A stretch of 63,229 bases of DNA, filler included, from Bipalium vagum (taxonomy: Eukaryota), in assembly GCA_037834085.1 (NCBI GenBank). It is 3 parts of 3 records of this genome, joined end to end, with 100 filler letters (N's around TTAATTAATTAA, not from the genome) between each part and the next. Parts side by side here need not be neighbours in the genome. Positions count along the whole stretch, not along the records: positions 1 to 22,141 come from JBBMKC010226327.1; 2 more parts are not named here. One strand, written 5' to 3'. The number at the start of each line of letters is the position of its first letter. Position 1 is the first letter of the stretch. The notes under the pieces are model-generated. The model was not told the DNA's origin, made no database searches, and saw nothing but the letters and a program-made list of their open reading frames with translations. A program made the translations under genes and the position numbers. Of the stretch, positions 5,952 to 42,179 are shown piece after piece.

Positions 5952-6123
5952 GTGTATTCCCCAAACAATGCCGATCCTAGCGAATTAATAACTTCAGATC
6001 CCGCACCCTATACAGTCTCCACCTCAATGGTCTATCGGTTACCAGGTATGAAAAACAATCAAATTCTGCCACTATCCAATGGGAACACAGATTTATATGA
6101 ACAGTCAAATTATTTTTCCTTTG
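5952..6123 (+). CDS. E2A/da: E-protein exon (VYSPNNADP...SNYFSF)
   Basis: tttcAG acceptor and G|GTAAGT donor; phase 1 fits exon 10864. May contain a 45-nt in-frame intron at 6046-6090. Confidence 0.65.
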
Positions 6124-9100
6124 GTAAGTATAATAGTGATCATTATTGATTTTATTGTTTATTTATTATTTTTATTATTATTATTCGTTTTTATTCTTAT
6201 CATTTGGAAAATTGCTTTTATTTTCGATGTGAACTAAATCTTCCGAATTTCTAACGCTGAACATCTGGATGATCATTAATAAATGTTTCTTTCTTTACAA
6301 TTCTGAATTATATTGATAATAAAGCTTTTAAACTCATAGATTTTTATTGTTTGAAGAAAGAGAGAAAAGAGACAATGAATCAGGTTCACCTAATTGCCTT
6401 AGAGGAATTAAAAACACTCATATGGTCTAATATAACATAAATTCTCACTAATGGGAAATATAAATACCTTTAACTAATTTGTTGTTATCAACTGACCAAT
6501 TCTCAGATGGTTGTTCCCATATTTTTTCTTTTATTATTTTTTCTAATTGATATTAATAAAGATATCGTTTCTCCACATTTCGTAGACCTTTAAGCCTGAG
6601 CCAAACAAGTTCGGTTATATACTTCAAGATAAAATTTCGCTTTAAATTTTTATTAGAGGAAATCGCTTTTTTGTCAACACATTTTCACAGAGATTGGCAT
6701 TCATGTTTATATATTTGTTGATTGTCATTTTTAATTTATTGTCGACTGAGAAAATTATAATAATTTATTTTATTTTGATTATTATTATTATTAATTATAT
6801 TATCTATTCATTGATTCATAACACATTTAATTTTCAAAATATAGTCGTACTTCATAAGGTTTATTTTATTATAATAATATTTGAAGATCGTCAATTATTT
6901 GGTCCGAGAAAAAAATCTTTAAAAACTGTTTTTCTTGGATTCGAAATTAATATTTTTCTGGAAATGTTGAAAGCTGAAATTTATTGATAATTTTGGAACT
7001 CTTAGGTATTGTTGTTACCGTATGTATTATGAATAAAATCATCAGATTTCACAACGAATTACTCCATATAGCAGAGAATTTTAAATATTGTGTCTACTAA
7101 GTGGTGCAAAATATAAATAAATTGAATTATTTGATTAATAAAAGGAAGTTATAATATAAAAATTTATAATGTTGTTATCATTCTTAAATTCTCAATTCCA
7201 AAATATTATAATTCCAAAATATCATTACTGTTTTAGTTTTAGTCCTAAAAATTCGTCCAGTTTGATTTAATTCTAATAATAATAATAATAATAATAATTT
7301 CAACCTTTCACATGCGCATGGACTGCTCTGACCGCTGAGCTGCATCCCAGAGTAATTTCAATTTATCTCACAGTCTTGATCAAAACCTCTGTTTTTTATT
7401 TCAAATCCTGGTTTCAATTAAATTTTTATTGCCCTTGGTGCGACTTTTTCGTTGTAGTCTTCTTGGATTATTAATAAAGCTCAGTCGGTGCTTGTCTTTA
7501 TCGTCTAACAAAGAAAATTATTTCTTATACGATTTTATTGTATTGTTTGTACTTTTAATAATATTTAGTCAGTTTTCTTTCGAAAAACACTTTAGTAACA
7601 TTTTTATAATTTAGTCCCTTAATTATCACGAATTTTACTTATTTTCTAAAGATATATTTATCAGGTAAAATGTGTTCCAAAGGTGACCGATATTAAATAT
7701 AAGAATGGTGACATCTTTTAATGAGTAATTTGCTTATGTTCGGACACTATCTCATTATCATCATTAAAACTTTCAAGGTGCTATTGTGCTTTATTCGTTA
7801 TTCTTGACATTTCTAATTACAATACTTAAGACTTTCACAAAAATTCGGTGGAACGATGAACAGTTTTCATTGATAACTCGAGAAAAAATTACATGATTAA
7901 AATTGTTTGTTGTAAAGACAGCTTGATACCAAGAATGCGTTTAAGTAGTACTTCAGATTTTTGGAATTGAAAAGAGTATTTAACTTAATCCTCACCTGGG
8001 CTCTCTTTTGAGCAAAAGTTCTGAAGAAAAGATGAAAAGTGTTTTAAAGTCTTAAAAAATCGCTCGTACTCGCGGAAAATTTGAGAAATCGAAAAATTGA
8101 CACACGTGTTATGTCTCATTTGATCACAGAGGAACCAGATTCGTTTATTTGATCGAAATAAAATTAGCGTTTGATTCAGAAAAAAAATTTATTGGAAATA
8201 GTGTAACTACTGACAAAATGCTGAGATTTCAATATGAGCCATTAAAAAATACCAAGACCGGATGGATTTTTTCAAGTGATCAAAATCAAAAAAATTGTTT
8301 GTCCCCAAGGGAAATAAATTAAGGCATTGCAAATAGTTGTCTTTTTATACCAAGAGTATCATTAACACAGAATTTGTTAAAGGACCTAAGACTGTCAATG
8401 GAGAATGTTATGTTCGTGGAAAAGAATTCAGATATGTCTTGTCGAATATCATTTTATTAAAAATGCCCCTGTACACAAATAAAAAGTAGTACCTGAATAT
8501 TCCTTTATTCACAACATTTTCCAGTGTGTTACTCCTGTAGACTTGGTGTAAGTCATGAAGCAAAACACCTATACCAACCGAGAAATTTGAAACTGAGGTT
8601 TTGGGACATTTCTAAAGAGGATTATGAAGATCGCTTGAAATATTTTATAACGAATTAAAATATAACGGATTGAAGTAGATTTATCATTTTTGAAAAACTT
8701 CTTAATTAAGTCCTTGAAGAATGCAATACTCAAGGAAAAGTTCAAAATTTTAATGAGCCCAAAAATGTCTTTAGATATTATTTTTAAAAATGTTCTTAAA
8801 TCGGAGTTGAAAATTACGAAAAATCGAATGTTTCAAAGGATTTAAAACAGGCTAAAAATATTTGTGTTATTAAAAAAGCAATGGAAATATAATCTTGATG
8901 ATTCTATGATAATAATTTCGACGAATTTTAGTCATGATATTGATCCAGAAGTGAAAATACATTTAAAACTAGTCGTTGAAACCAATCCAATGTCTGTGAA
9001 ACATTAAATTGAGTTTCAGATTTAGAAAAATATGATTTTGCCTAATGATCAGAGGAATTAAAATATATTACAAGAAATAGACCGAAATCATTTAAACATT

Positions 9101-12100: not shown

Positions 12101-15100
12101 TCTGGTTTTTCGTGGCGGTGATGGGTTGCGAATATATCATTTTGGCCAGTGAAAAATGTTCGTTTACCATTATAATTTTTATGCTCGTTTAATACTTTCC
12201 CCAATATCTTTGCCACCATGATTGTGTTTTTTTTTTTAAAAAAATTTGTTACTGCTGGACTACTTTAATGGTGTCAGTTCAAGTCGGAACGTTTTCGTGC
12301 CCGATTAACGATATCATTTTACGAAAACCGTTAAATTCTCTCACTTCGATATTTCGGTGTTTGGCAGACAATTTTCTTAATAATGCTCTTCTGACAAGAT
12401 TTTATTTCCCTTGTAACTGTTTATCATCGCTCGACACTGTCGGTAATTCTATTTTCGTTTTTTCTTGTTTGTTTTGGTCATTTACGCTTTTCAAATCATT
12501 GATTTCACTTTCTGTTTTATAGTTGATGAGAAATTTCTATTCACAGAATCTTTACATGTGTCCCAATAATGCCCCAGTCGGGGACTACAGATCGGCATAT
12601 TCTTCAAATACTTTGCTCAATAGTATGTATTTCTTTTTCATTGACTCTAACTTATGCCAATATTTTCTGAAACAGACCCTTCCGGGTACATACCAACAGA
12701 TTATTATCAGCAACAAAAACCAAGTGCCAGCGACCCTGTTGTAACTTGTGCAGCATCATTAGTCAGTAATTGTTCGAATGGTATGGGGTCAGGGTTTGAG
12801 GCGTCTATTACCAATCTCAGTCAACATATGGATTCTACGTTACAGAACACAATTCATATGATAAAAAATCAAATGGACGCCGGAGTGGAAGCCCTTTATG
12901 ACATTGCCGGTGCTAATAGTCTAGATTCAATGAGAGTCACTTACACCGATTTATCAGGACTTTCTTCGGGTAACAATTTGTTGTCATCTGCTAGTCAAAT
13001 GTTCCCCGGAGAAACAGATATGTCCAATCTTTCATCGACACCTGGAATGAATTCCAATGTATGTAAAGGTACACTGACTCAGACTATGCCTCTTGATCCC
13101 AGTCTTGCTGCAGCCAATACATCGTTACTCAGTGATCATTCATCGTCGGCTAATTCTGGATCCTGTAATATTCGATATATTATTTATTGTTGGATTAATT
13201 TACCATTGTTGATCTAGCTAATGGTAAATCTGGATCTTCTCAGAAAACTTCTACTAATCGGGCTTTTAATCAAGTTTTCGGTTTGCAAATGACCAATAAT
13301 ATCAACAACAGCAAGTCTCAGAGCAACCCTCAAGCTGCAATCAATGTGCAACCTCCTAAAAGAAGAGCAGACAATAATACAGACAGTATTTGTGATGATT
13401 CAGAAGGCACTATTGATCCTGACGAAACTCCTGAACAGAAACATCTGCGGGAAAAATCTCGAAGACAAGCAAATAACGCAAGGGAAAGGTAGCTTTCACG
13501 TTTATTATCGAATTTTGAGAGTTTTACAATTATTGATTAGAAATGATTAATAATAATAATAAATAAATAAAATAATAATAAATGTAAGATTCTCAGAAAA
13601 AACTCGGAATTATGTAGAGAATCGATTGAAAAAAAATCTGATGCTCCGTTTGGATCTTGGTTCTAATGACACTTCTCATCTATTAAAAATTCTCTCTAAA
13701 AATGTGTAATTTTGCGATATAAGATCATAGTTATGAATAGTTTCCCTTTGATATTTACGGAGACCTTTTATCGATCTCTCAAGTCACACAGAAATCAAAT
13801 CAAATTGATTTGTTACCAAAAAATTGATGCCAAACGGACAATTTAACAAGAAAAAATTGTCATCTTTTTGTTGTCGTTGGTCTGAGAAATTATTGGTTTT
13901 TTATATTTTAAAATAAGAAAATTAATCCCAAAATAATGTCAAGTCTCGACTCGATATTCCTATAAATCAATTAAAGCGAAGCTGTAAAATTTGGATATTT
14001 TCATTTTATTTCGTTTATTTATTTTCCGGTAATTCTGAAACCACGAGAGATGATGACAAAACCTGTCAAAAGGTTTTAATTGGAAATATCGATTTTATAG
14101 TGCTCTTCACCCATGATTGATTTTCTGTCAATTATTAAAATATTTGGAAAAATCAATAGAAGCAGCATAGCGTGCAAAGTGTCTAAACTAGATTTTTCTC
14201 CTAATTATTGCCCCATTTGAGAACAGTTTTTTATTATTTGATAATTGACGGTGAAAGTTATTGATTTTATGAAAGTTTTTTAAAGAGAAAAATACAGAAT
14301 GAGATTCGACCAGTGCCCAACTCCGTCATGTTTAAATAGTTTTTCTACTTTCCATTCAAATTCTCACAAGTTCTCAGTTACTTAGGGATACAATAAAAAC
14401 CACAATAATCAACTAAATCATATGAACTCCAAAACGCTGTCAGTTATTTTAGCAATCGAAATATACAACGTTTTGAAATGATTAATTATTTTCAATTAAA
14501 AAATAAACGCGAAAAAATATTGACTTTTCTTAAAATTAATTATGCGCTCATCTTATAACACCACTCTGTAGTCAAAATCTCAATTTCAAACTTCTTGTAT
14601 TGTGGACAACCACATCTCTCCGTAAATAATTTCGGATTTCTTGTGGCAGAGTAAAAAAATACTTCAGATTTAAGTTTTTTTCCAAATCAGTGAAATATTT
14701 CTGACAAATCCCCAAACAGTTGTCTTGACTTGACCCCAAATATCGGGAAAATGATAATCGATAATATTGTGACTTATTTTCTCAAATTCCCAACAAGAGC
14801 GTGTCCAGTTTGAAATTGATAACAAAGTTTGAAAATCCCTCTTTAATTTGCCATATATAAACAAAAATTCCAAAGGAAACTTATTGGTTAATTTTAATTT
14901 GAAATTTCATACAGAAAATTCCCAATTTCAAACTGGACAAAGCGGTTCATAACAATGATTGTTTTGTGTCTCTTCCTACTGTTAAAATATCATTTTAAAA
15001 GGTTTTAGAGAACTCTCGATAACTGCTGAGGTTTTGAAAAACATTTTTTTAATGATAAAATCTATAAAGTCATCCGTAGTTGAGTAATTTTAGGGTCCCA

Positions 15101-18091
15101 TTGAATTTTTATAAATGGAACATCTTTATTTAAATTGAAATCGTTTTCAAGACAATGTACATCAATTTTCTCAAAAATTTGACTAATCTTTTCCTCACCT
15201 GTCCTTTTTTTGAACGAATTGTATTGATTAATATTTGTTGAACTCTGAATTTCTCTAAAAAACATATTTTTTCGATTCTTATATAAATTAGGTCGTCTTT
15301 CATTGATTTCTTTTCACTTTTGTTGTAAATTATTATTGGAACATTCGCAAAATTTTCAAATTTTTCGATATATTAGCTATTTTTTATTTATCCGTGAGAA
15401 TGAACGGTTGGATGGTTTCTCGCTTAAAGATTTGTTGGGAATTGATTTCTTTGTTGTTTATTGAAATTTTTCTGCTAGTTAATAATTGTTCAATAAAATA
15501 TTAAAGATTTTATCTATTTTCAACATTATTATTCCGCCTTTTACTGGTCTCGTATTTCTGAATTGAATAATAGTATATAATTAAATCATTTGGACCTGGT
15601 CTCGTATATTTGTAACCCAAAATGTTGTCATGCCTTCTATCGTTTATTGGAATCCATTGATGATCAATAAATGTGGGAAATCTTGTGATGCAGTAAAGTC
15701 GAGAGAAGTGATAAAAAGCCATTGGTATTCAATGTTAACTGATTATTAAAAATGATGCGGAACAAGGTTTTTATTGTACCATATTTTTAAAACCAAGATT
15801 GCGAGTCAGAGAAATTAATGATGCCTTCAAAGAACTTGGTCAAATGATAAATATTCACACGGGTAACAATCAGCCGTTGACTAAGTTGATGATTCTCCAG
15901 CAAGCAGTCTCTGTTATCACGGGATTGGAGCATCAAGTCCGGGGTACGAGGCCTGGCATGTGGTGCATGTGATTGGAATTGTGTAAAACATCGGCAAGAT
16001 TTGAGAAATACACTTCATGTTCTCTTTGTTCGAATTTAGCTTTCTTCACAATACAAGAAACTCCTAAACTCAACTGCCAAAACGACATCTCCATTTATCG
16101 TTCTTCTCTTTTCTGTTTTTCTTTTATTAATGGATTTTCATTATTTAATGAACATAAACTATTTCACAAAAACCTTTGGCTTTACCAAACGATCCCCGCT
16201 AATTATTTTTTCTCTAGAGTGCGAGTTCGTGATATAAACGACGCATTCAAGGAACTAGGACGCATGTGCATGATGCATTTAAAGCATGATCGACCTCAGA
16301 CTAAATTGACTATCCTTCAACAAGCTGTCAACGTCATAACTAGCCTTGAACAACAAGTCAGAGGTCAGTAGCAAATGTTTTCTTTTATTTTTTGTTTGTT
16401 TGGTTTGCTTTTTTAAATGTGCTTTTTTCGTCTCTGATCAATTTTCGATTTTAACAAACCCGATGATGGTGATGAGATAAATACTCTTCATTACCCGTGA
16501 TCATCGGTTGTCTCTTTCTATCGACAATACACGTGTATTTCCGCGAGAAATGTGGATTATCGATTGATCACATTGGAATTCATTGGTTGACTACATTTTA
16601 TAGAACGGAATCTGAACCCGAAACAAGCCTGTTTGAAACGTCGCGAAGAAGAAAAGAATGACGATATACCCTTAGGCGTTGGACTGAATATGCCACCTTG
16701 TTCAAATGGTGGCGTTCCTTTGTTAAATAATCATCTGAAAATATCATCGGCACAAAACGACATTGTTTCAAACTTTAATCTGAATTCTAAGTCGATGTCA
16801 GATATCGCGGCTGGCCACTGTGTACCGAATCAAAAGTTGGGAAAAGGTAACCGAACAACACTAATTAATAATAATAATATTTTTATTATTTTTTATAAAA
16901 ATTAACTATTTTATTAATATCAAAATAAAATAATTAAATAAATATTTTAGCTATATTTTATTTTAATAAATATTGTTTTATTATTTAAGTTTAATTTTTA
17001 TTCTTTTATTAATTATTTCATAAATATATTTTTATTTATTATGAGTAATACTGTTTTAATTATGTATAATTTTATATTATTTTTTTATTTCCTATTATTT
17101 ATTTTTTTATAATTTAATACTTATTAAATAATAAATATTATAATTTTTTAGATCTTTTTATTATTTTATAATAATAGTTTTTTTATTATTATAAATAAAT
17201 ATTTTTAAGAATAAAAAATAATTAAATAATTTTTTTTCAGATTTTTATAATTTAATATTTTTATTAATTATATCAGAAAATTTAAATAATTTAAGACATT
17301 TATTATTATTATTATTATATGAACTAATAATATATTTATTTATCTATAATAATAATACTCATAATAATAAAAAAACCATAAAAATAAAATACTCAGTACT
17401 TAAAATGCTTTTTGATCAATGAAATTAACACAAAATTAGGATTAGAATATAATTTCTATTCTTTCCAGGGGCGGCATTCAATCTCGATTCATTCAGACAC
17501 CAGATGGGTTCCAACGCATCCACTGGTTACGGAAGCCAATACTTATTGGACCCGACTGCCTCTTCTCACATGTGGCAAAGCTATCAAACCAATCAAAAGT
17601 TCCAAGATCAATTGAACCCGTCGATGTATTTGCAGTCTGCTGACATGGACGGAAAATCTACTCTCGACATCGTGACCAGTATCACCAGCTCGTCGACGTT
17701 CCATCCATATTCTCATTCAACAGCCGGAATAACGTCGTCAATTTCGGACATTTTCGGACTGAACAATTCTTCGACCACGTCGGCCTTCTCCGATTCTTTG
17801 ATGCGGAAAATCATGTCCAACCGACCCGATTCCAGCAGCGGCTTCGAGGTGGAGAATGAAGAACCCAGCGATTCTGACGAGGACGATGAAGATCAAAACA
17901 ATGATCAGCAACACCATCAACCCGACGACACTAATTTGCTCAAATCATGCCAATCCAAGAACAACAACAACAATCTCCATGGCAACAGCAGTAGTGCTGA
18001 ATCTTCGTTTCCCGTTGTTGTCAATGCGTGCGCCAGACTGAAATCAGAAGCAATCGTTTGTTCTTCCGACCCAAATTCTTCAAACTCGTAA
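5952..18091 (+). CDS. E2A/da: E-protein (class I bHLH transcription factor, E2A/daughterless/TCF3-TCF4-TCF12 family), spliced gene; true 5' start not established
   Basis: Phase-consistent GT-AG exon chain: 5952-6123, 10864-10931, 12547-12622, 12676-13164, 13218-13488, [15798-15943 or 16218-16363], 16604-16846, 17469-18091. Spliced bHLH reads [27 protein letters not shown]...[40 protein letters not shown], the E-protein signature. [11 protein letters not shown] resembles the LDDAIHVLRNH motif. Confidence 0.93.
7780..8720 (+). mobile_element. highly decayed mariner-like transposase relic in an E-protein intron
   Basis: Fragmentary translations (SHLITEEP for WVPHxLT; VTTD...QYEP for VTxDExWxxxYxP) in the expected order, with many stops. 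Boundaries approximate. Confidence 0.45.
10864..10931 (+). CDS. E2A/da: E-protein exon ([23 protein letters not shown])
   Basis: ttttttgtAG acceptor and GTATGA donor; phases 1/0 bridge the neighbouring exons; PDMW resembles the D-x-W motif of TCF3/4. Confidence 0.65.
12547..12622 (+). CDS. E2A/da: E-protein exon ([25 protein letters not shown])
   Basis: cacAG acceptor and GTATGT donor; followed by a 53-nt intron containing a CTCTAAC branch-like motif. Confidence 0.75.
12676..13164 (+). CDS. E2A/da: E-protein exon with AD2/Rep-like motif
   Basis: Lies in ORF 12654..13217; aacAG acceptor and T|GTAATA donor. Confidence 0.85.
13218..13488 (+). CDS. E2A/da: E-protein exon ending in the basic region (...[13 protein letters not shown])
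   Basis: tctAG acceptor; AG|GTAGCT donor splits the Arg codon (phase 2). Confidence 0.92.
15798..15943 (+). CDS. E2A/da: HLH exon A, mutually exclusive ([48 protein letters not shown])
   Basis: 146 nt, ccaAG acceptor, G|GTACGA donor, no stops, 32/48 aa identical to exon B. Absent from the ORF track because the read-through ORF is under 60 aa. Confidence 0.88.
16218..16363 (+). CDS. E2A/da: HLH exon B, mutually exclusive ([48 protein letters not shown])
   Basis: 146 nt, ttttttctctAG acceptor, G|GTCAGT donor; canonical E-protein HLH. Confidence 0.95.
16604..16846 (+). CDS. E2A/da: E-protein exon starting [18 protein letters not shown]
   Basis: ttttatAG acceptor and G|GTAACC donor; conserved post-HLH C domain. 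Confidence 0.93.
17469..18091 (+). CDS. E2A/da: E-protein last coding exon (Ser-rich and acidic tail)
   Basis: ctttccAG acceptor, phase 1, in frame with ORF 17504..18091; TAA at 18089-18091. Confidence 0.82.
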
Positions 18092-22141: not shown

Positions 22142-22241
22142 NNNNNNNNNNNNNNNNNNNNNNNNNNNNNNNNNNNNNNNNNNNNTTAATTAATTAANNN
22201 NNNNNNNNNNNNNNNNNNNNNNNNNNNNNNNNNNNNNNNNN
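22142..22241. other. artificial contig spacer N44-TTAATTAATTAA-N44
   Basis: Exactly 100 nt; the 12-mer at 22186-22197 gives stops in all six frames; identical to the spacer at 40869. Confidence 0.97.
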
Positions 22242-22319
22242 TTACTAAAATAATAATAAATGTTTAAAATTCATGATTTTTATAGGTGTACTCAGACTTT
22301 TGCACGGGGGTGTATATAA

Positions 22320-22800
22320 ATGAGTAACTTTAATTATTGGAAATGAGTGAAACATTAAATTCCGATATATACTGTAAAATTCTTGACCATTTGAGAGATG
22401 CATTAATTGTAAAACGTCCTGCATTAAGCAACAGAAAAAAAATAGATTTTTATCACAAGGCTAGGGCACACACTTCTAAAGTGAAGCAGTAAAAGCTGAA
22501 AGCCTTTCAATAGGAAATAACGCCTCAGCTTAAATATAGCCAAGACATTGTGCCTTCGGATTAATATTTGTTTCTATCTTTACAACATTTCGTTCAATGC
22601 AAAAAGTTTGACAGAATTCAAGGTATGAAAACTGCCCTGAATAATCTCTTTAATGAAAAGCATAGTCCCTGGTATGACAATGGTATCGAAAGTTTGATCA
22701 AACGTTGGAAAGAGGCTGTTGATAAAAATGTAAAATATATACTTGATTGAATTCGTTTTGTTATTTGTATAAATAAATTAAAATTTTCTTAAAAAAAACT
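22320..22800 (+). mobile_element. mariner transposase C-terminal relic, preceded by a Tc1-like TIR end at about 22285-22315
   Basis: ...KRPALSNRKKIDFYHKARAHTS...YSQDIVPSD*YLFLSLQHF...GIESLIKRW match mariner HDNARPH and YSPDLAPSDYHLF motifs. Confidence 0.8.
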
Positions 22801-22913: not shown

Positions 22914-25900
22914 GATTGAGAGGACCACAAGGAAAAGTTGGACCACCTGGTCAGCGTGGCGGAACAGGATCAAAGGGTTCTCAGGGTCTACCAGGATCTC
23001 ATGGTATTGCAGGAAATCCAGGAAAAGATGGAAAACTAGGAGCCATGGGTCTTCCAGGAAAAAACGGAGCTTTAGGAAGAGTTGGTCCAGTTGGATCTAT
23101 AGGGCCCGCTGGACTTCCAGGAAAACCTGGACAAGCAGGACTTCAAGGATCTCCCGGAGCTCCTGGTAAAAATATGCAACCAGGTGCTCAAGGTCTTCCG
23201 GGTGAAAGGGGTTTACCTGGGAAACCTGGAGAAAATGGTATTCCTGGACCTTCTGGTCAGCCAGGCCAACAAGGATTAGAAGGTCCTATTGGTCCACCTG
23301 TAATATGTAATTTTCTTAATAATTGGATTATTATTTCTTTAGGGCAATAGAGGTCAAAGAGGATTACCAGGTCCAAATGGCTCATCTGGATTGAAAGGAA
23401 ATAAGGGTTCTAAAGGTCCAATCGGAAAACCAGGAATTACAGGGGATACTGGAGCTCTAGGTCCTCAAGGTCCTAGAGGAGAAAATGGTGAAAATGGTAA
23501 TCCTGGTGAGCACGGATCGGTTGGAGAAATGGGAAATCCAGGAATCAGAGGATCTAGAGGATTACCTGGCTTATCTGGGAAAGATGGAGAAAATGGTAAA
23601 AATGGAAGTGATGGAATGAAGGGTAATGTAGGAGCTCCTGGGCCAAATGGAAGAAGAGGTACAGTGGGTGTTCAAGGAAGTATTGGTACTCCTGGTGTTG
23701 CAGGACTAAAGGGAGATACAGGCACAACTGGCCTGCCTGGTAGAATCGGTATAGCGGTAAGAATATAGTTTAATAGGTATTTTAAAATATTTTATATAAT
23801 TTGGATCTTTTATGAAAATCTTTTAAGTTTTAGTAGAATTGATTTTCAATATTGACAAAATTTTATGATGGTTAATTGTGCTCAATATTTTAGAATTTTT
23901 GTAAAATATATAATCTTTTATAAATACAAAATAAATCAGACAAACTTCAAAACGATATATAAGCACTGTATTTTACTGCATGAATAATATTTTTTATATC
24001 AATGTAATATAAAAATTCCCGTCTATCTAATGTATACTAATTAATTTTAATTGATTTCTTGATATTTTTGTTATTAGATGACAAATGAACGATCTGATAT
24101 TTTGGTGATGCACAAAAGGGAAAAGATCAAATTGATACAAGGAGCTAGATCATGACGGTGACCGTCCTAGAAGAGGAAGAAAGCGGACCACAAGATCATC
24201 AAGAAGTGGGATATACGTGATCCGTAGGTATCAATCAGTAAAATAGCCTGTGAGACCGGTGTACAGAATTGCCAAGACAGAGCTCAACCTGAAGCCTTGC
24301 AAGCCTCACAAAGTCCAGCTTTTTATAGATTCTAACAAAGAAGTATGTAACTTCGGCATCGGGCCGCAGGTGAGCGATGGGAGAAAATCGTCTTTCCGAT
24401 GAGAAACTGTTTACAATTGAATTGTCATAATGACCAAACCGATAGAATATGGTCAACTGAAAACCTTGGGCCTGTGATATTGTCACTCAATTTCAGGAAA
24501 AGTTTACAGCTATGTATCGACACTCAAGGTGGCCACTTTGAAGCCACTTCCATATGTTGCACCTCCAAACATACTTAAATGTTATTCGTTGCAACTTTTT
24601 TATTTCTGTCATTATAATAAATTATAAAGAAAAAACGAGTCTTATTTATTTTGAGGCACTCTGTAATATATTGGCGCTTATATTAACAAGTGCACTACTG
24701 AATATTTAGTATTATAAGATGATTGCTAATCAATTGTAAATGAAAACCAATAATTATTTTTATTTTATGTTTAGATGTAAAAGGTTCGTCAAGCTTAAGT
24801 TAGAAAATTTTAAAAAAATTATTTCATAACAAATAAGGAAGTCTTTCATTTAATATCCAAGATAGAGTATTTTACATGAATAGATTATATTTTTAATCCT
24901 GGTAGTTTTAAATTAAATAACTATTTTTAATAATAATTTTTATTAAAGGGTTTACCAGGTAAACCTGGAATAGATGGTATTCCTGGACCAGAGGGTTTGA
25001 AAGGAGATAAAGGAATAGCTGGAATAATGGGACTTCCGGGAGAAATGGGTTCAGTAGGATCCAAAGGTTCTAAAGGAAAACCTGGGGAATTTGGAAAAGT
25101 TTCTTTTTCTGGTAGATCAGGTGCAACATCCGGCGCTCGAGGTGCACCCGGGATTCCTGGGAAGATTGGTGACAATGGACTTAAAGGAGTAGACGGACCC
25201 CCTGGTAAGCATCAAGGTTGATTAATTATAATCAAAAATAAATTATAGGACAAATGGGAGAACTCGGTCCTACTGGATCTCCAGGACCTATTGGACCGAT
25301 AGGCCTTAAAGGTGAAAAAGGTCCAGATGGAGCAGATGGGGGTATCGGATTACCAGGAAATAATGGAGCTACTGGACCACCGGGACCGCAAGGACCTGTT
25401 GGACCCTCTGGAAATCAAGGAAGATCAGGATTTTCTGGAGAAATTGGTCAACCAGGTCAAATTGGACCAACAGGTTTGCCAGGTAAAAGTGGAGATGACG
25501 GAAAATCTGGATCTCCTGGACAAAGAGGACCAATTGGTTTACCTGGACCAAATGGATTGACAGGAACTGTTGGAGTATCTGGAAGAGATGGTGTTAGAGG
25601 AGAAGCAGGTTCTATTGGTGACCCAGGCTTGCCCGGTGACGTTGGAATGCCAGGGAATTCTGGAATGGATGGGAAATCTGGTGAACCTGTAAGTTAAATG
25701 AATTTTCATATCATATTCTTGCTATTTGTATACACTATTTGCACTACATAAAGAAAATTTCATTGATAATTATTAAATTTTCATTAGAAGATACACTTAT
25801 CTAATAATTAATTTGAGAAAACATAACTTTGACAACTTTTTTGTGATATTTTGCTATGAAATGAAATGGAATTAAGGCATTTAAATTTGATGAAGAATTC

Positions 25901-40473: not shown

Positions 40474-40868
40474 CATACCCAAAATGTGGAAAACATGTGA
40501 ACGCGCTTATTTATTGATCAAAAATATGTAATACGCAAGAGAATCGTGGAAATAGAACTAAAATAAGAAAAACCTACAACGCTACCAAGAAAGGAAAAAT
40601 TCACGAATAATGGTAAACAGGAAAATCTTAATTCACTAAGAAAAATCGTGGTCGATTAAGCTAACTAAACTTTTTGGATAAAATCCTTACGTATTATTAA
40701 ACATTTCCTTTTTTATTTGAATCTATTATGTTTGCAATTATCAGTGTTAGCAGCTATTTCAATAAAGTCACTCATAGTTTCAAAAATTTTCTTAATCCAA
40801 AAAAAAAATAAAATACTTAAACAAATTTCCGTAAATTAATTAATTTAAATAAAGTGTCTCTTTTATTA

Positions 40869-40968
40869 NNNNNNNNNNNNNNNNNNNNNNNNNNNNNNNN
40901 NNNNNNNNNNNNTTAATTAATTAANNNNNNNNNNNNNNNNNNNNNNNNNNNNNNNNNNNNNNNNNNNN
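40869..40968. other. artificial contig spacer N44-TTAATTAATTAA-N44
   Basis: Same 100-nt structure as 22142-22241. Confidence 0.97.
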
Positions 40969-41031
40969 TAAAAATTACGAAATTAAACTTAAAAATTACG
41001 AAATTAAACTTAAAAAATACGAAATTAAACT
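40969..41031. repeat. 21-bp tandem repeat, 3 copies, truncated by the gap
   Basis: taaaaattacgaaattaaact x3, with one mismatch in copy 3. Confidence 0.9.
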
Positions 41032-42179
41032 TTAAAACCTATATAATACTAAGTAAAGTTAAACGAATGATGATTATCCTAAATAATACCGGTATACTTG
41101 AAATTTCAGATTAATTGTTTGATGTCGAACTATGTTTACCAATCCATTCGAATGGAATTAAATTTAAATAAATATAGTTAATATAACTATCGTATATTAT
41201 AAATATAAATGAGTTTTGACCTTTATAAACTATAAGATAATTCCATGTACATATAAGTTAAGTCTTAAAGTTAATTACAGATATAACTATTCGTTTTAAA
41301 TGTTATGTAATTTAGTTGCATGTCATTTTTGCAATTAATTTATCTATTTTTAATAAATAATAAATTAAAATTTTCAGTTATTCTTTTAATTATTATTATT
41401 ATTTATTCTTTTTTTTATTATATGAAATCCATTAAAAATTAATATATTTAAATGGAGACTTTAAAATATGCAAGAGAAATTGTATTAAAAATTATAAACT
41501 CTAACAATTGAATTTAAGATTTATAATTTTAATTTAATTTATAAGACGTATTTATATAAGAACTAAGAGGAAAAAGCCACCCAGTTGAAAATTTCTAAAA
41601 CACTTTTCAATGAGATTATCGGATACTTCACTGTTCACTTGATTAATGATGTCTGGATATTCCAATTTTCGCAAAATTAAAATTTTTCCTCACTGATTTT
41701 CAGTTAAAATTTTTAATGCAATATCGTTGACATTTCCAAATACATTTTTCAAATGATTTTAAGTGTTAAAATTTTTTAATATTAATTTTTGAGAACTGAA
41801 AAAAAAGAATTTAATTATTAAAATTGAATTTAATTACTGAAAGAATTTATTTATAGATTTAAATTAAAAACATATTTCATTGTAAGATATAATTAAACTT
41901 TTTTTGTTATTATTTAGTTGAGAATTGTTATCCTATAAATTTAAGGAAAATATAAAAACTGATCAGCACATTGAATATATAGTTTATGAAGTTGTCGTGA
42001 TAGATAAATTCTTGAAAAATAGAATTTTATCTGACGATAATTGTTCCACAATTTAAATTTCAAGACAAATATTAAAATAATATTTGTTTACAATGTGACA
42101 AAATAGTTATCCAAAACATCTTTGCAAATTTTTGAAACGATTTTTCATTAATATCAGAAGAAATCGAAAAATTTTTTAT

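What the first reader, a model, noticed from the sequence alone, without database searches (positions are those of the whole stretch)
15798..16363. Invertebrate E-protein with two mutually exclusive HLH exons: an E12/E47-like isoform switch with its own exon boundaries
Seen: between the basic-region exon (ends ...NNARER, phase 2, 13488) and the ERNLNPK exon (16604) lie two homologous exons, each exactly 146 nt, same phases, GT-AG bounded and stop-free. As 146 is not a multiple of 3, including both or neither shifts the frame. They share 32/48 residues while silent sites are heavily diverged (7 of 9 codons in INDAFKELG differ synonymously), so both look old and selected rather than one being a dead copy. 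Differences cluster in the end of helix 1 and the loop ([13 protein letters not shown] vs [13 protein letters not shown]), and exon A lacks the helix-1 Cys. Known: vertebrate TCF3 makes E12 and E47 from mutually exclusive exons that include the basic region, and that Cys has been linked to disulfide-stabilised E47 homodimers. Inference: here the basic region is shared and only the dimerisation module is swapped, suggesting an independent origin and a switch of partner preference. Exon A is invisible in the ORF track and easily missed by annotation. I cannot confirm it is unreported.
Basis: partly seen in the sequence, partly recalled or inferred. Interest (0 to 1): 0.92.

Follow-up and report, generated by a model that had tools for sequence, protein, structure and literature searches.

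The report
Two alternative HLH exons in E-protein
A flatworm-type E-protein (daughterless/TCF3-family) gene carries two intact, equal-sized copies of the exon for its dimerisation helix-loop-helix, usable only one at a time, and the pair is an old feature shared by flatworms, annelids and molluscs, not a peculiarity of this genome.

Summary
Exons A (15798-15943) and B (16218-16363) are each 146 nt, AG/GT-bounded, in the same phase and open. They share 32/48 residues and are saturated at silent sites. Both score as Pfam HLH. They lie between a basic-region exon (ends 13488) and the ERNLNPK exon (starts 16604). Using both or neither gives an early stop.

Exon A is under purifying selection. A second, strongly diverged copy of the gene in the same assembly keeps both exons (A vs A': pN 0.06, pS 0.77). 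A-type exons, with a loop of the form H-T-G-N-S-Q-P-L-T-K-L-M, occur in eight other flatworm genera, two annelids and many molluscs. A cestode and an annelid locus have the same 146+146 nt layout. On a tree the A-type exons form one well-supported group. Vertebrate E12 and E47 group with other chordate E proteins.

The pair is therefore ancient and spiralian-wide. It probably arose independently of E12/E47, although an AU test cannot exclude a shared origin. Mollusc and annelid transcripts and RefSeq isoforms join A-type exons to both neighbours.

No RNA data could be obtained for this species, and no flatworm model joins A to the downstream exon. I found no paper describing this. Verdict: real, probably functional, a new variant of a known kind, of moderate interest.

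The parts
13218..13488 (+). Shared exon encoding the acidic stretch and the basic region (..[24 protein letters not shown] + 2 nt of the Arg codon). The 3' end is exact. The 5' end (AG at 13216-17) is inferred.
   Evidence: sequence, GT at 13489-90; tblastn of flatworm E proteins P0257, P0009, P0189 and P0158 ends at 13489.
15798..15943 (+). Exon A: 146-nt A-type HLH exon (helix 1, loop, helix 2). Loop ..[17 protein letters not shown].., no helix-1 Cys. Weak acceptor tract (..tttttaaaaccaag).
   Evidence: boundaries, frame. (Pfam HLH, E 4.5e-10). (purifying selection against the second copy). (A-type group 100/98). (852 database hits, the best being flatworm A-type exons at 82-90% identity).
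15944..16217 (+). 274-nt intron between the two alternative exons. It is not conserved with the second gene copy except for the pyrimidine tract and AG in front of exon B.
   Evidence: alignment with the paralogous intron. (no convincing inverted repeats).
16218..16363 (+). Exon B: 146-nt canonical E-protein HLH exon (..[17 protein letters not shown]..) with the helix-1 Cys and a strong acceptor (ttttttctctag).
   Evidence: (Pfam HLH, E 1.8e-9). (98% self match, 96% to the second copy). (84% to the Mesocestoides B-isoform model P0247).
16604..16846 (+). Shared downstream exon starting (G)AA CGG.. = [18 protein letters not shown].., the conserved flank C-terminal to the E-protein HLH. The start is exact. 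The end (AAG|GT at 16846/16847) is inferred from the matching position in the second copy.
   Evidence: sequence, frame. (second copy ends ..CAAG|gttgg). (P0247 residues 198-218 match 16603-16665).
12654..13165 (+). Upstream coding exon(s) of the same gene (open frame 12654-13217; boundaries not determined). No database relative was found for it.
   Evidence: ORF. (no hit at E<=0.001). Assignment to the gene is inferred from position and strand only.
17504..18091 (+). Probable last coding exon of the gene (Ser-rich and acidic C-terminal region). Boundaries not determined.
   Evidence: 195-aa ORF, same strand. (no Pfam family). Assignment inferred.

Best explanation
The window holds the 3' half of a class I bHLH (E-protein; daughterless/TCF3/4/12 family) gene of a flatworm-like animal. 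One exon carries the DNA-contacting basic region. The whole helix-loop-helix dimerisation module is encoded twice, on tandem 146-nt exons A and B. Because 146 is not a multiple of 3, only mRNAs with exactly one of the two stay in frame. The gene can therefore make two E proteins with the same basic region and different HLH modules.

B is the canonical E-protein module. A is a distinct spiralian type that arose by tandem exon duplication before flatworms, annelids and molluscs diverged. It has been kept under purifying selection since.

The A type differs at fixed positions:
- Arg to Gln/His at the end of helix 1.
- No helix-1 Cys.
- The loop motif [DE]-[KR]-P-Q becomes [SNG]-Q-P-L.
- Met at the second residue after the T-K-L motif at the start of helix 2.

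Inferred, not shown: B, with the strong acceptor, is the default choice and A, with the weak acceptor, is the regulated one. Choosing A changes homodimer stability, partner choice and/or backbone contacts of the universal bHLH partner.
For: Shown here:
- Exon geometry, phases and open frames. Both exons pass Pfam HLH.
- Double inclusion or double skipping gives premature stops.
- A second, strongly diverged copy of the gene in the same assembly (contig C86945) keeps A' and B' in the same order, with AG/GT sites. A vs A' is 42/48 aa with pN 0.058 and pS 0.77. B vs B' is 47/48 aa with pN 0.013 and pS 0.55. Their introns are unalignable.
- A-type exons occur in Macrostomum, Cichlidogyrus, Protopolystoma, Hydatigera, Taenia, Echinococcus, Schistosoma and Schistocephalus. 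They also occur in the annelids Lamellibrachia and Ridgeia and in many molluscs.
- The layout is identical (146+146 nt, A before B, same phases, GT exactly after the 146th base) in Schistocephalus and Lamellibrachia.
- All 19 A-type exons form one group on the ML tree (100/98), with five diagnostic columns.
- In other spiralians, 21 distinct A-type exon sequences are joined to ERNLNPK in protein models. These include the Ridgeia model P0049, mollusc RefSeq isoforms such as P0191 and P0192, and the Logan contig products P0060 and P0156. P0060 and the annotated models also join A to ANNARER.
Against: - There are no RNA data for this species. The only public run holding exon A is genomic DNA.
- No flatworm protein model in the searches joins exon A to the ERNLNPKQ exon. 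Flatworm models either run on into the intron after A (P0013, P0014, P0188, P0257) or fuse A with B (P0001, P0009, P0158, P0160).
- One transcript-like Logan product (P0258) also reads into the intron after A.
- No conserved intronic element or competing RNA pairing that would enforce exclusivity was found.
- The functional difference between the A and B modules is untested.
Confidence: 0.8

Rival explanations
1. In flatworms exon A is not swapped for B. It acts as an alternative last coding exon. Transcripts read on from A into the A-B intron (here 9 more codons, G-T-R-P-G-M-W-C-M, then a stop), giving an E protein that ends just after helix 2 and lacks the ERNLNPK..C-terminal region.
For: Flatworm models P0013, P0014, P0188 and P0257 and the transcript-like Logan product P0258 all continue from A into intron sequence. 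No flatworm model joins A to ERNLNPKQ. The ORF 15799-15972 closes 9 codons after the exon.
Against: A GT sits exactly after base 146 of exon A in the window, its second copy, Schistocephalus and Lamellibrachia. The 146-nt length and phase that fit the ERNLNPK exon are preserved. Neither would be needed for a read-through end. The post-exon peptides are not conserved (window GTRPGMWCM vs GTIDCQ in P0257). In annelids and molluscs A is demonstrably spliced to ERNLNPK. Read-through in helminth models is the usual behaviour of gene predictors on fragmented contigs.
Confidence: 0.1
2. Exon A is a dead or decaying duplicate (pseudo-exon) that is never used.
For: RNA was not seen for this species. 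Its acceptor tract is weak. One third-copy exon in the pearl oyster locus is indeed disrupted, so such copies can decay.
Against: The frame is open and both splice sites are intact. pN/pS is about 0.08 against a copy whose silent sites are saturated. Identity to A-type exons of other flatworm classes is 82-92%, and there is a cross-phylum A-type group with diagnostic residues. That is hundreds of millions of years of preservation.
Confidence: 0.02
3. Concerning origin only, and compatible with the best explanation: the A/B pair and vertebrate E12/E47 descend from one duplication in the bilaterian ancestor (A with E12/TCF4/TCF12, B with E47). The intron after ANNARER was later lost in chordates, and one exon was lost in many lineages.
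For: The AU test does not reject A-type+E12 (p 0.15) or A-type+E12+TCF12+TCF4 (p 0.29) as one group. In flatworms and the annelid, A starts with Leu like E12/TCF4/TCF12 and B starts with Val like E47 (alignment). The order in the gene is the same (E12-like first). Crustaceans also have two HLH exons after a shared basic exon, so the arrangement is not confined to spiralians.
Against: The ML tree puts E12 and E47 together with TCF4, TCF12 and tunicate E proteins (94/83), and the A-type exons apart from all of them (100/98). None of the five A-diagnostic residues is found in E12. The Leu/Val first residue is not consistent in molluscs. The exon boundaries differ. The duplicated exon has multiplied independently several times (bivalves, the organism of L006, the organism of P0003), so recurrence is the rule.
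Confidence: 0.2

Closest known systems
Vertebrate TCF3 (E2A) exons 18a/18b giving E12 and E47 by mutually exclusive splicing (PMC6795145, PMC6120717, PMC6317319)
   Same: Same gene family. Tandem duplicated exons encoding the HLH, used one at a time. The first exon is E12-like in its first residue. The same 3' boundary (..QQVR | ERNLNPK).
   Different: In TCF3 each alternative exon also encodes the basic region and residues upstream of it. Here the basic region is on a separate, shared exon and only helix 1, loop and helix 2 are swapped. The A-type loop and helix-1 residues are unlike both E12 and E47, which both keep the Cys. The tree favours separate origins, but this is not decisive. In human cells both or neither exon can be included and regulation is by hnRNP H1/PTBP1 (PMC6795145). 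Here double inclusion or skipping breaks the frame.
Mollusc and annelid 'transcription factor 4/12-like' genes and their RefSeq isoforms (e.g. Crassostrea virginica X4 P0192, Saccostrea cucullata X6 P0191, Ostrea edulis X19/X30 P0210/P0211, Ridgeia P0049, Lamellibrachia P0162)
   Same: Orthologous A-type HLH exon (one tree group). The same intron positions, with a 146-nt exon (Lamellibrachia, Pinctada). A is joined to ANNARER and to ERNLNPK in annotated isoforms.
   Different: The annelid has A+B like the window. The one bivalve locus examined has three A-type copies (one disrupted) and no B-type exon. Oyster isoforms differ in which A-type copy they carry. These are database models only. I found no publication describing them.
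Drosophila daughterless, C. elegans HLH-2 and crustacean E-protein genes
   Same: Class I bHLH, the single common partner of class II bHLH factors. Crustacean genes (Hyalella, Cyprideis, Darwinula) also show a shared basic exon followed by two HLH exons.
   Different: The crustacean first exon is not A-type (no diagnostic residues; 49 codons in Hyalella). The second crustacean exon resembles my recollection of the daughterless HLH; no daughterless sequence was compared here. From general knowledge, not tested here, daughterless and HLH-2 are described as having a single HLH.

Membership tests
Class I bHLH / E-protein family (TCF3, TCF4, TCF12, daughterless, HLH-2) | HLH domain detectable by profile | tested here: met
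   Pfam PF00010 for exon A (39.6 bits) and exon B (37.7 bits), cutoff 20.7. The best solved-structure matches are TCF4 and E2-alpha (8osb, 6od3, 2ql2; E about 1e-14 to 1e-13).
Class I bHLH / E-protein family (TCF3, TCF4, TCF12, daughterless, HLH-2) | E-protein-type basic region (R-R-x-A-N-N-A-R-E-R) directly before helix 1 | tested here: met
   The upstream exon ends ..[10 protein letters not shown](R) at 13488. It aligns to the basic regions of flatworm E proteins.
Class I bHLH / E-protein family (TCF3, TCF4, TCF12, daughterless, HLH-2) | Conserved flank after helix 2 (E-R-N-L-N-P-K[11 protein letters not shown]) | tested here: met
   The exon starting at 16604 reads [18 protein letters not shown]. 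The same motif is present in the hits examined.
Class I bHLH / E-protein family (TCF3, TCF4, TCF12, daughterless, HLH-2) | N-terminal activation domains (AD1, AD2/loop-helix) | tested here: inconclusive
   The upstream ORF 12654-13217 found no relatives and no Pfam family. The 5' part of the gene may lie outside the exons recognised.
Mutually exclusive exon pair derived from tandem exon duplication | Adjacent, homologous exons of the same length and phase with intact splice sites | tested here: met
   146 nt each, 274 nt apart, 32/48 aa identical, AG/GT on both.
Mutually exclusive exon pair derived from tandem exon duplication | Only single inclusion gives an open frame | tested here: met
   A+B gives a stop 6 codons into B. 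Skipping both gives a stop after 18 codons.
Mutually exclusive exon pair derived from tandem exon duplication | Both copies kept by selection | tested here: met
   pN/pS is about 0.08 (A) and 0.02 (B) against the second gene copy. Cross-phylum conservation.
Mutually exclusive exon pair derived from tandem exon duplication | Transcripts carry one or the other, never both | not testable with these tools
   The only run holding the exon is DNA. In other spiralians, A-only products exist (P0049, P0060, P0156, P0191, P0192), and a B-only model exists in Mesocestoides (P0247).
Orthology of A/B with vertebrate E12/E47 | A groups with E12 and B with E47 on an exon tree | tested here: inconclusive
   The ML tree does not show it (E12+E47 with chordates 94/83; A-type group 100/98). 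The constrained trees are not rejected (p-AU 0.15 and 0.29). Only 48 columns were available.
Orthology of A/B with vertebrate E12/E47 | Alternative exon includes the basic region (TCF3 structure) | tested here: not met
   The basic region is on the separate exon ending at 13488. The same split occurs in the cestode, annelid, bivalve and amphipod loci.

The most novel reading that the evidence does not exclude
The gene for the common bHLH partner acquired a second, functionally distinct dimerisation module once, before flatworms, annelids and molluscs split, and independently of the vertebrate E12/E47 duplication. The A module has an uncharged loop, no Cys and Met after T-K-L. It changes which class II bHLH partners, or which DNA contexts, the E protein serves. 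In spiralians, and so in flatworm stem-cell and neural specification, the 'single ubiquitous E protein' would then be two proteins set by splicing. Crustaceans and several other lineages would have reached the same solution again, making the HLH exon of E-protein genes a recurrent site of mutually exclusive exon evolution.
Probability: 0.4. Interest if true: 0.7.

Novelty: new variant of a known kind. Interest (0 to 1): 0.55.

Why it matters
E proteins are the obligate partners of the tissue-specific bHLH factors (achaete-scute, atonal/neurogenin, MyoD, Twist, Hand and others). In invertebrates they are treated as one invariant, ubiquitous subunit. A second HLH module conserved since the common ancestor of flatworms, annelids and molluscs would mean that splicing can retune the whole bHLH network in these animals, including planarian and parasite stem-cell systems. 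It would also be a likely convergent parallel to E12/E47.

There is a practical consequence. Published flatworm gene models of this locus are wrong in several different ways: A and B fused, a truncated end after A, or B only. bHLH surveys count one domain per gene and so miss the A isoform, and RNAi or in situ probes do not separate the two.

Tried and rejected
- **RNA evidence.** The look-up of sequencing runs with exon A gave a single run of unknown kind. When laid on the window, its contigs ran through the introns from 12500 to about 14870, but none lay on exons A or B. The only joints were non-canonical ones in AT-rich repeats at 16860-17420, so it is genomic DNA.
- **Species identification.** A search with the 187-aa upstream ORF found nothing, so the species is not identified. 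'Flatworm' rests on the best matches of exon A (82-92% to monogenean, cestode and schistosome exons), the KQAC variant of the downstream motif, and the close model P0257.
- **P0257.** This UniParc entry (UPI000608B29A) is 79-94% identical to the window's exons and joins the basic exon to exon A. I first read it as transcript evidence, but it is probably a gene model from a fragmented helminth assembly. It is not on record as a contig, so it is not counted as RNA evidence.
- **Mechanism of exclusivity.** There is no conserved intronic block between the two gene copies apart from the exon B acceptor. There are no convincing docking or selector-type inverted repeats. The A-B intron (274 nt here, 152 nt in Schistocephalus) is too long for steric exclusion. 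The very short A-B spacer suggested by model P0002 was an artefact of that model.
- **Look-ups that failed.** Schistosoma and Saccostrea loci were not on record. There was no DNA for the contig of P0003.
- Searches used single exons by reference or database proteins. Joined frames were only checked for stop codons inside a script. Complex prediction and structure prediction were not used, because any HLH is expected to dimerise and a pass would not separate A from B.
Full report
**1. The observation**

- The basic-region exon ends at 13488 (..RRQANNARE plus the first two bases of an Arg codon), followed by GT.
- Exon A is 15798-15943 and exon B is 16218-16363.
- Each is 146 nt, preceded by AG and followed by GT, with the same phases. 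Each is open only in the HLH frame.
- The next exon starts at 16604 and reads [18 protein letters not shown].
- The two peptides share 32/48 residues. Nucleotide identity is only 62%, and 22 of the 32 identical residues use different codons (7 of 9 in INDAFKELG).
- Both score as Pfam HLH. Their closest solved structures are TCF4 and E2-alpha bHLH domains.
- Either exon alone keeps the frame. Both together stop 6 codons into B. Neither stops after 18 codons.

**2. Is exon A alive?**

The window's own assembly (440 Mb, 272,664 contigs) holds a second copy of this part of the gene on contig C86945. It has A', B' and the ERNLNPK exon in the same order and with AG/GT sites. The introns of the two copies do not align, apart from the pyrimidine tract and AG in front of exon B. 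The copy is therefore an old paralogue, or a second related genome in the sample, and not an allele.

| Comparison | Identical residues | pN | pS |
|---|---|---|---|
| A vs A' | 42/48 | 0.058 | 0.77 (saturated) |
| B vs B' | 47/48 | 0.013 | 0.55 |

Exon A is under strong purifying selection, a little weaker than on exon B.

**3. Relatives**

An exhaustive HMMER search with exon A gave 852 hits. The best hits carry either two HLH stretches or an A-like one.

Names show A-type exons (loop H-T/S-G-x-x-Q-P-L-T-K-L-M) in these groups:
- Flatworms: Macrostomum, Cichlidogyrus, Protopolystoma, Hydatigera, Taenia, Echinococcus, Schistosoma and Schistocephalus.
- Annelids: Lamellibrachia and Ridgeia.
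- Many molluscs.

Genomic loci fetched for four species show the same gene plan:

| Species | Locus | HLH exons |
|---|---|---|
| Schistocephalus (cestode) | L008 | A 5964-6109, B 6262-6407 |
| Lamellibrachia (annelid) | L005 | A 22209-22354, B 22951-23096 |
| Pinctada (pearl oyster) | L009 | three A-type copies, the third disrupted; no B-type |
| Hyalella (amphipod) | L007 | two exons after the shared basic exon: 49 codons, then 146 nt |

In the cestode and the annelid all four exons are 146 nt with the same phases, and GT follows directly after base 146. An unidentified metagenomic contig (L006) has one A-type and two B-like exons.

**4. Exon tree**

The tree used 45 HLH exon peptides and 48 columns (IQ-TREE).
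- All 19 A-type exons (flatworm, annelid, mollusc, L006) form one group with support 100/98.
- B-type exons sit in the unresolved backbone with rotifer, acanthocephalan and other E proteins.
- Gecko E12 and E47 fall together with TCF4, TCF12 and tunicate E proteins (94/83).
- The crustacean second exons form their own group (100/100).

Five columns are diagnostic for the A type:
- Column 15: Arg becomes Gln/His.
- Column 24: Asp/Glu becomes Ser/Asn/Gly.
- Column 25: Lys/Arg becomes Gln.
- Column 27: Gln becomes Leu/Met.
- Column 31 becomes Met.

In addition, the helix-1 Cys is lost at column 17. The A type therefore arose once, before these phyla split.

However, with 48 columns the AU test cannot reject A+E12 (p 0.15) or A+E12+TCF4+TCF12 (p 0.29). 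Independent origin is likely but not proven.

**5. Use in RNA**

For this species nothing could be learned. The only public run holding exon A is genomic.

In other spiralians there is good evidence. Twenty-one distinct A-type exon sequences are found joined to ERNLNPK in protein models. These include RefSeq isoforms of oysters, abalones and scallops, the Ridgeia model, and products of short Logan contigs (P0060, P0156) that must be cDNA, because introns flank this exon in every genome examined. Oyster isoforms differ in which A-type copy they contain.

In flatworms the picture is poor.
- Models fuse A and B (Macrostomum P0001, Taenia P0158, Echinococcus P0160, Cichlidogyrus P0009).
- Or they end in the intron after A (Hydatigera P0014, Taenia asiatica P0188, Protopolystoma P0013, and the close relative P0257).
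- Or they use B only (Mesocestoides P0247).

None joins A to ERNLNPKQ. This leaves a minor rival: that A is a terminal exon with read-through. The exactly conserved GT, length and phase speak against it.

**6. Mechanism**

Shown: only single inclusion is productive.

Inferred: double or zero inclusion is removed by nonsense-mediated decay. Exon B has the stronger acceptor in both gene copies (ttttttctctag / ctttttctctag) and is the default. Exon A has the weaker one (..aaaaccaag / ..aacctcaag) and needs activation. I found no competing RNA pairings and no conserved intronic element, and the intron is too long for steric exclusion.

The A-specific residues remove three positive charges and one negative charge at the end of helix 1 and in the loop, and they remove the Cys. 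According to published work on E2A, recalled and not tested here, that Cys stabilises homodimers by a disulfide. His and Glu at columns 20 and 44, which pair across the E47 homodimer, are kept. A change in homodimer stability, partner choice or backbone contacts is therefore plausible, but it is untested.

**7. Comparison with what is known**

TCF3 E12/E47 is the known kind (PMC6795145, PMC6120717, PMC6317319). This case differs in three ways: the basic region is shared, the frame enforces exclusivity, and the origin is old, spiralian-wide and probably separate.

Eight full-text searches and three papers read found no description of alternative HLH exons in an invertebrate E-protein gene. These included Murre's 30-year review and the lophotrochozoan bHLH survey (PMC5381572), which counts one E12/E47 gene in each mollusc and in Capitella and two in Helobdella and Lingula. 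The isoforms do exist as unremarked RefSeq and UniProt models in molluscs and annelids, so it is not new to databases.

**8. Limits**

- The species is not identified.
Searches were made exon by exon by reference, or with database proteins.
- Protein lists were capped at 120-150 rows, so absence of a flatworm A[10 protein letters not shown] model is weak evidence.
- Only one mollusc locus was inspected for a B-type exon.

**Verdict**

Exon A is a conserved, selected alternative HLH exon. It is a new variant of a known kind, of moderate interest (0.55).

Noticed in passing
G000 contig C86945 = L004 (minus strand): A' 1480-1337, B' 1142-999, ERNLNPK exon from about 884: A second, strongly diverged copy of the E-protein gene's 3' part in the same assembly (silent sites saturated, introns unalignable). 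Either this animal has two E-protein paralogues, each keeping both HLH exons, or the sample holds two related genomes. The basic-region exon is not within the 1.5 kb upstream on that contig.
   Followed up: partly
Proteins P0206 (Logan transcript), P0033 (Liolophura X4), P0085 and P0208 (scallop isoforms): Some mollusc isoforms and transcripts carry an extra small exon between the basic exon and the HLH exon. It encodes a second basic region (..[25 protein letters not shown]..). In molluscs the DNA-contacting region itself may therefore be exchanged by a cassette exon.
   Followed up: no
L009 (Pinctada imbricata) 40850-40995, 41245-41390, 41712-; P0157 and P0159 (Magallana gigas): Bivalves have three tandem A-type HLH exons and, in the locus examined, no B-type exon. 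The third Pinctada copy loses the frame after ..KELGH (a decayed exon or an assembly error). Oyster RefSeq isoforms differ in which copy they use.
   Followed up: partly
L007 (Hyalella azteca) HLH exons at about 3605 and 4678; P0025 and P0028 (ostracods): Crustacean E-protein genes also have a shared basic exon followed by two alternative HLH exons. The first is divergent (49 codons in Hyalella). The second resembles my recollection of Drosophila daughterless; no daughterless sequence was compared here. Not A-type, so apparently another duplication.
   Followed up: partly
L006 (ENA metagenome contig k141_343067) HLH exons at 1526, 2339, 2591; P0003 (ENA, 568-kb contig): Unidentified animals with three (one A-type plus two B-like) or two near-identical B-like tandem HLH exons. 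The exon has duplicated repeatedly in different lineages.
   Followed up: no
Database models P0001, P0009, P0013, P0014, P0158, P0160, P0188, P0002: Published flatworm gene models of this locus are inconsistent and mostly wrong around the two exons: A and B fused in one protein, a truncated end in the intron after A, or odd splices.
   Followed up: yes
window 16860-17420: An AT-rich repeat in the intron after the ERNLNPK exon draws very high contig depth (up to about 1180 against about 20 elsewhere) and many false joints in the DNA run. It is a dispersed low-complexity or repeated element.
   Followed up: no
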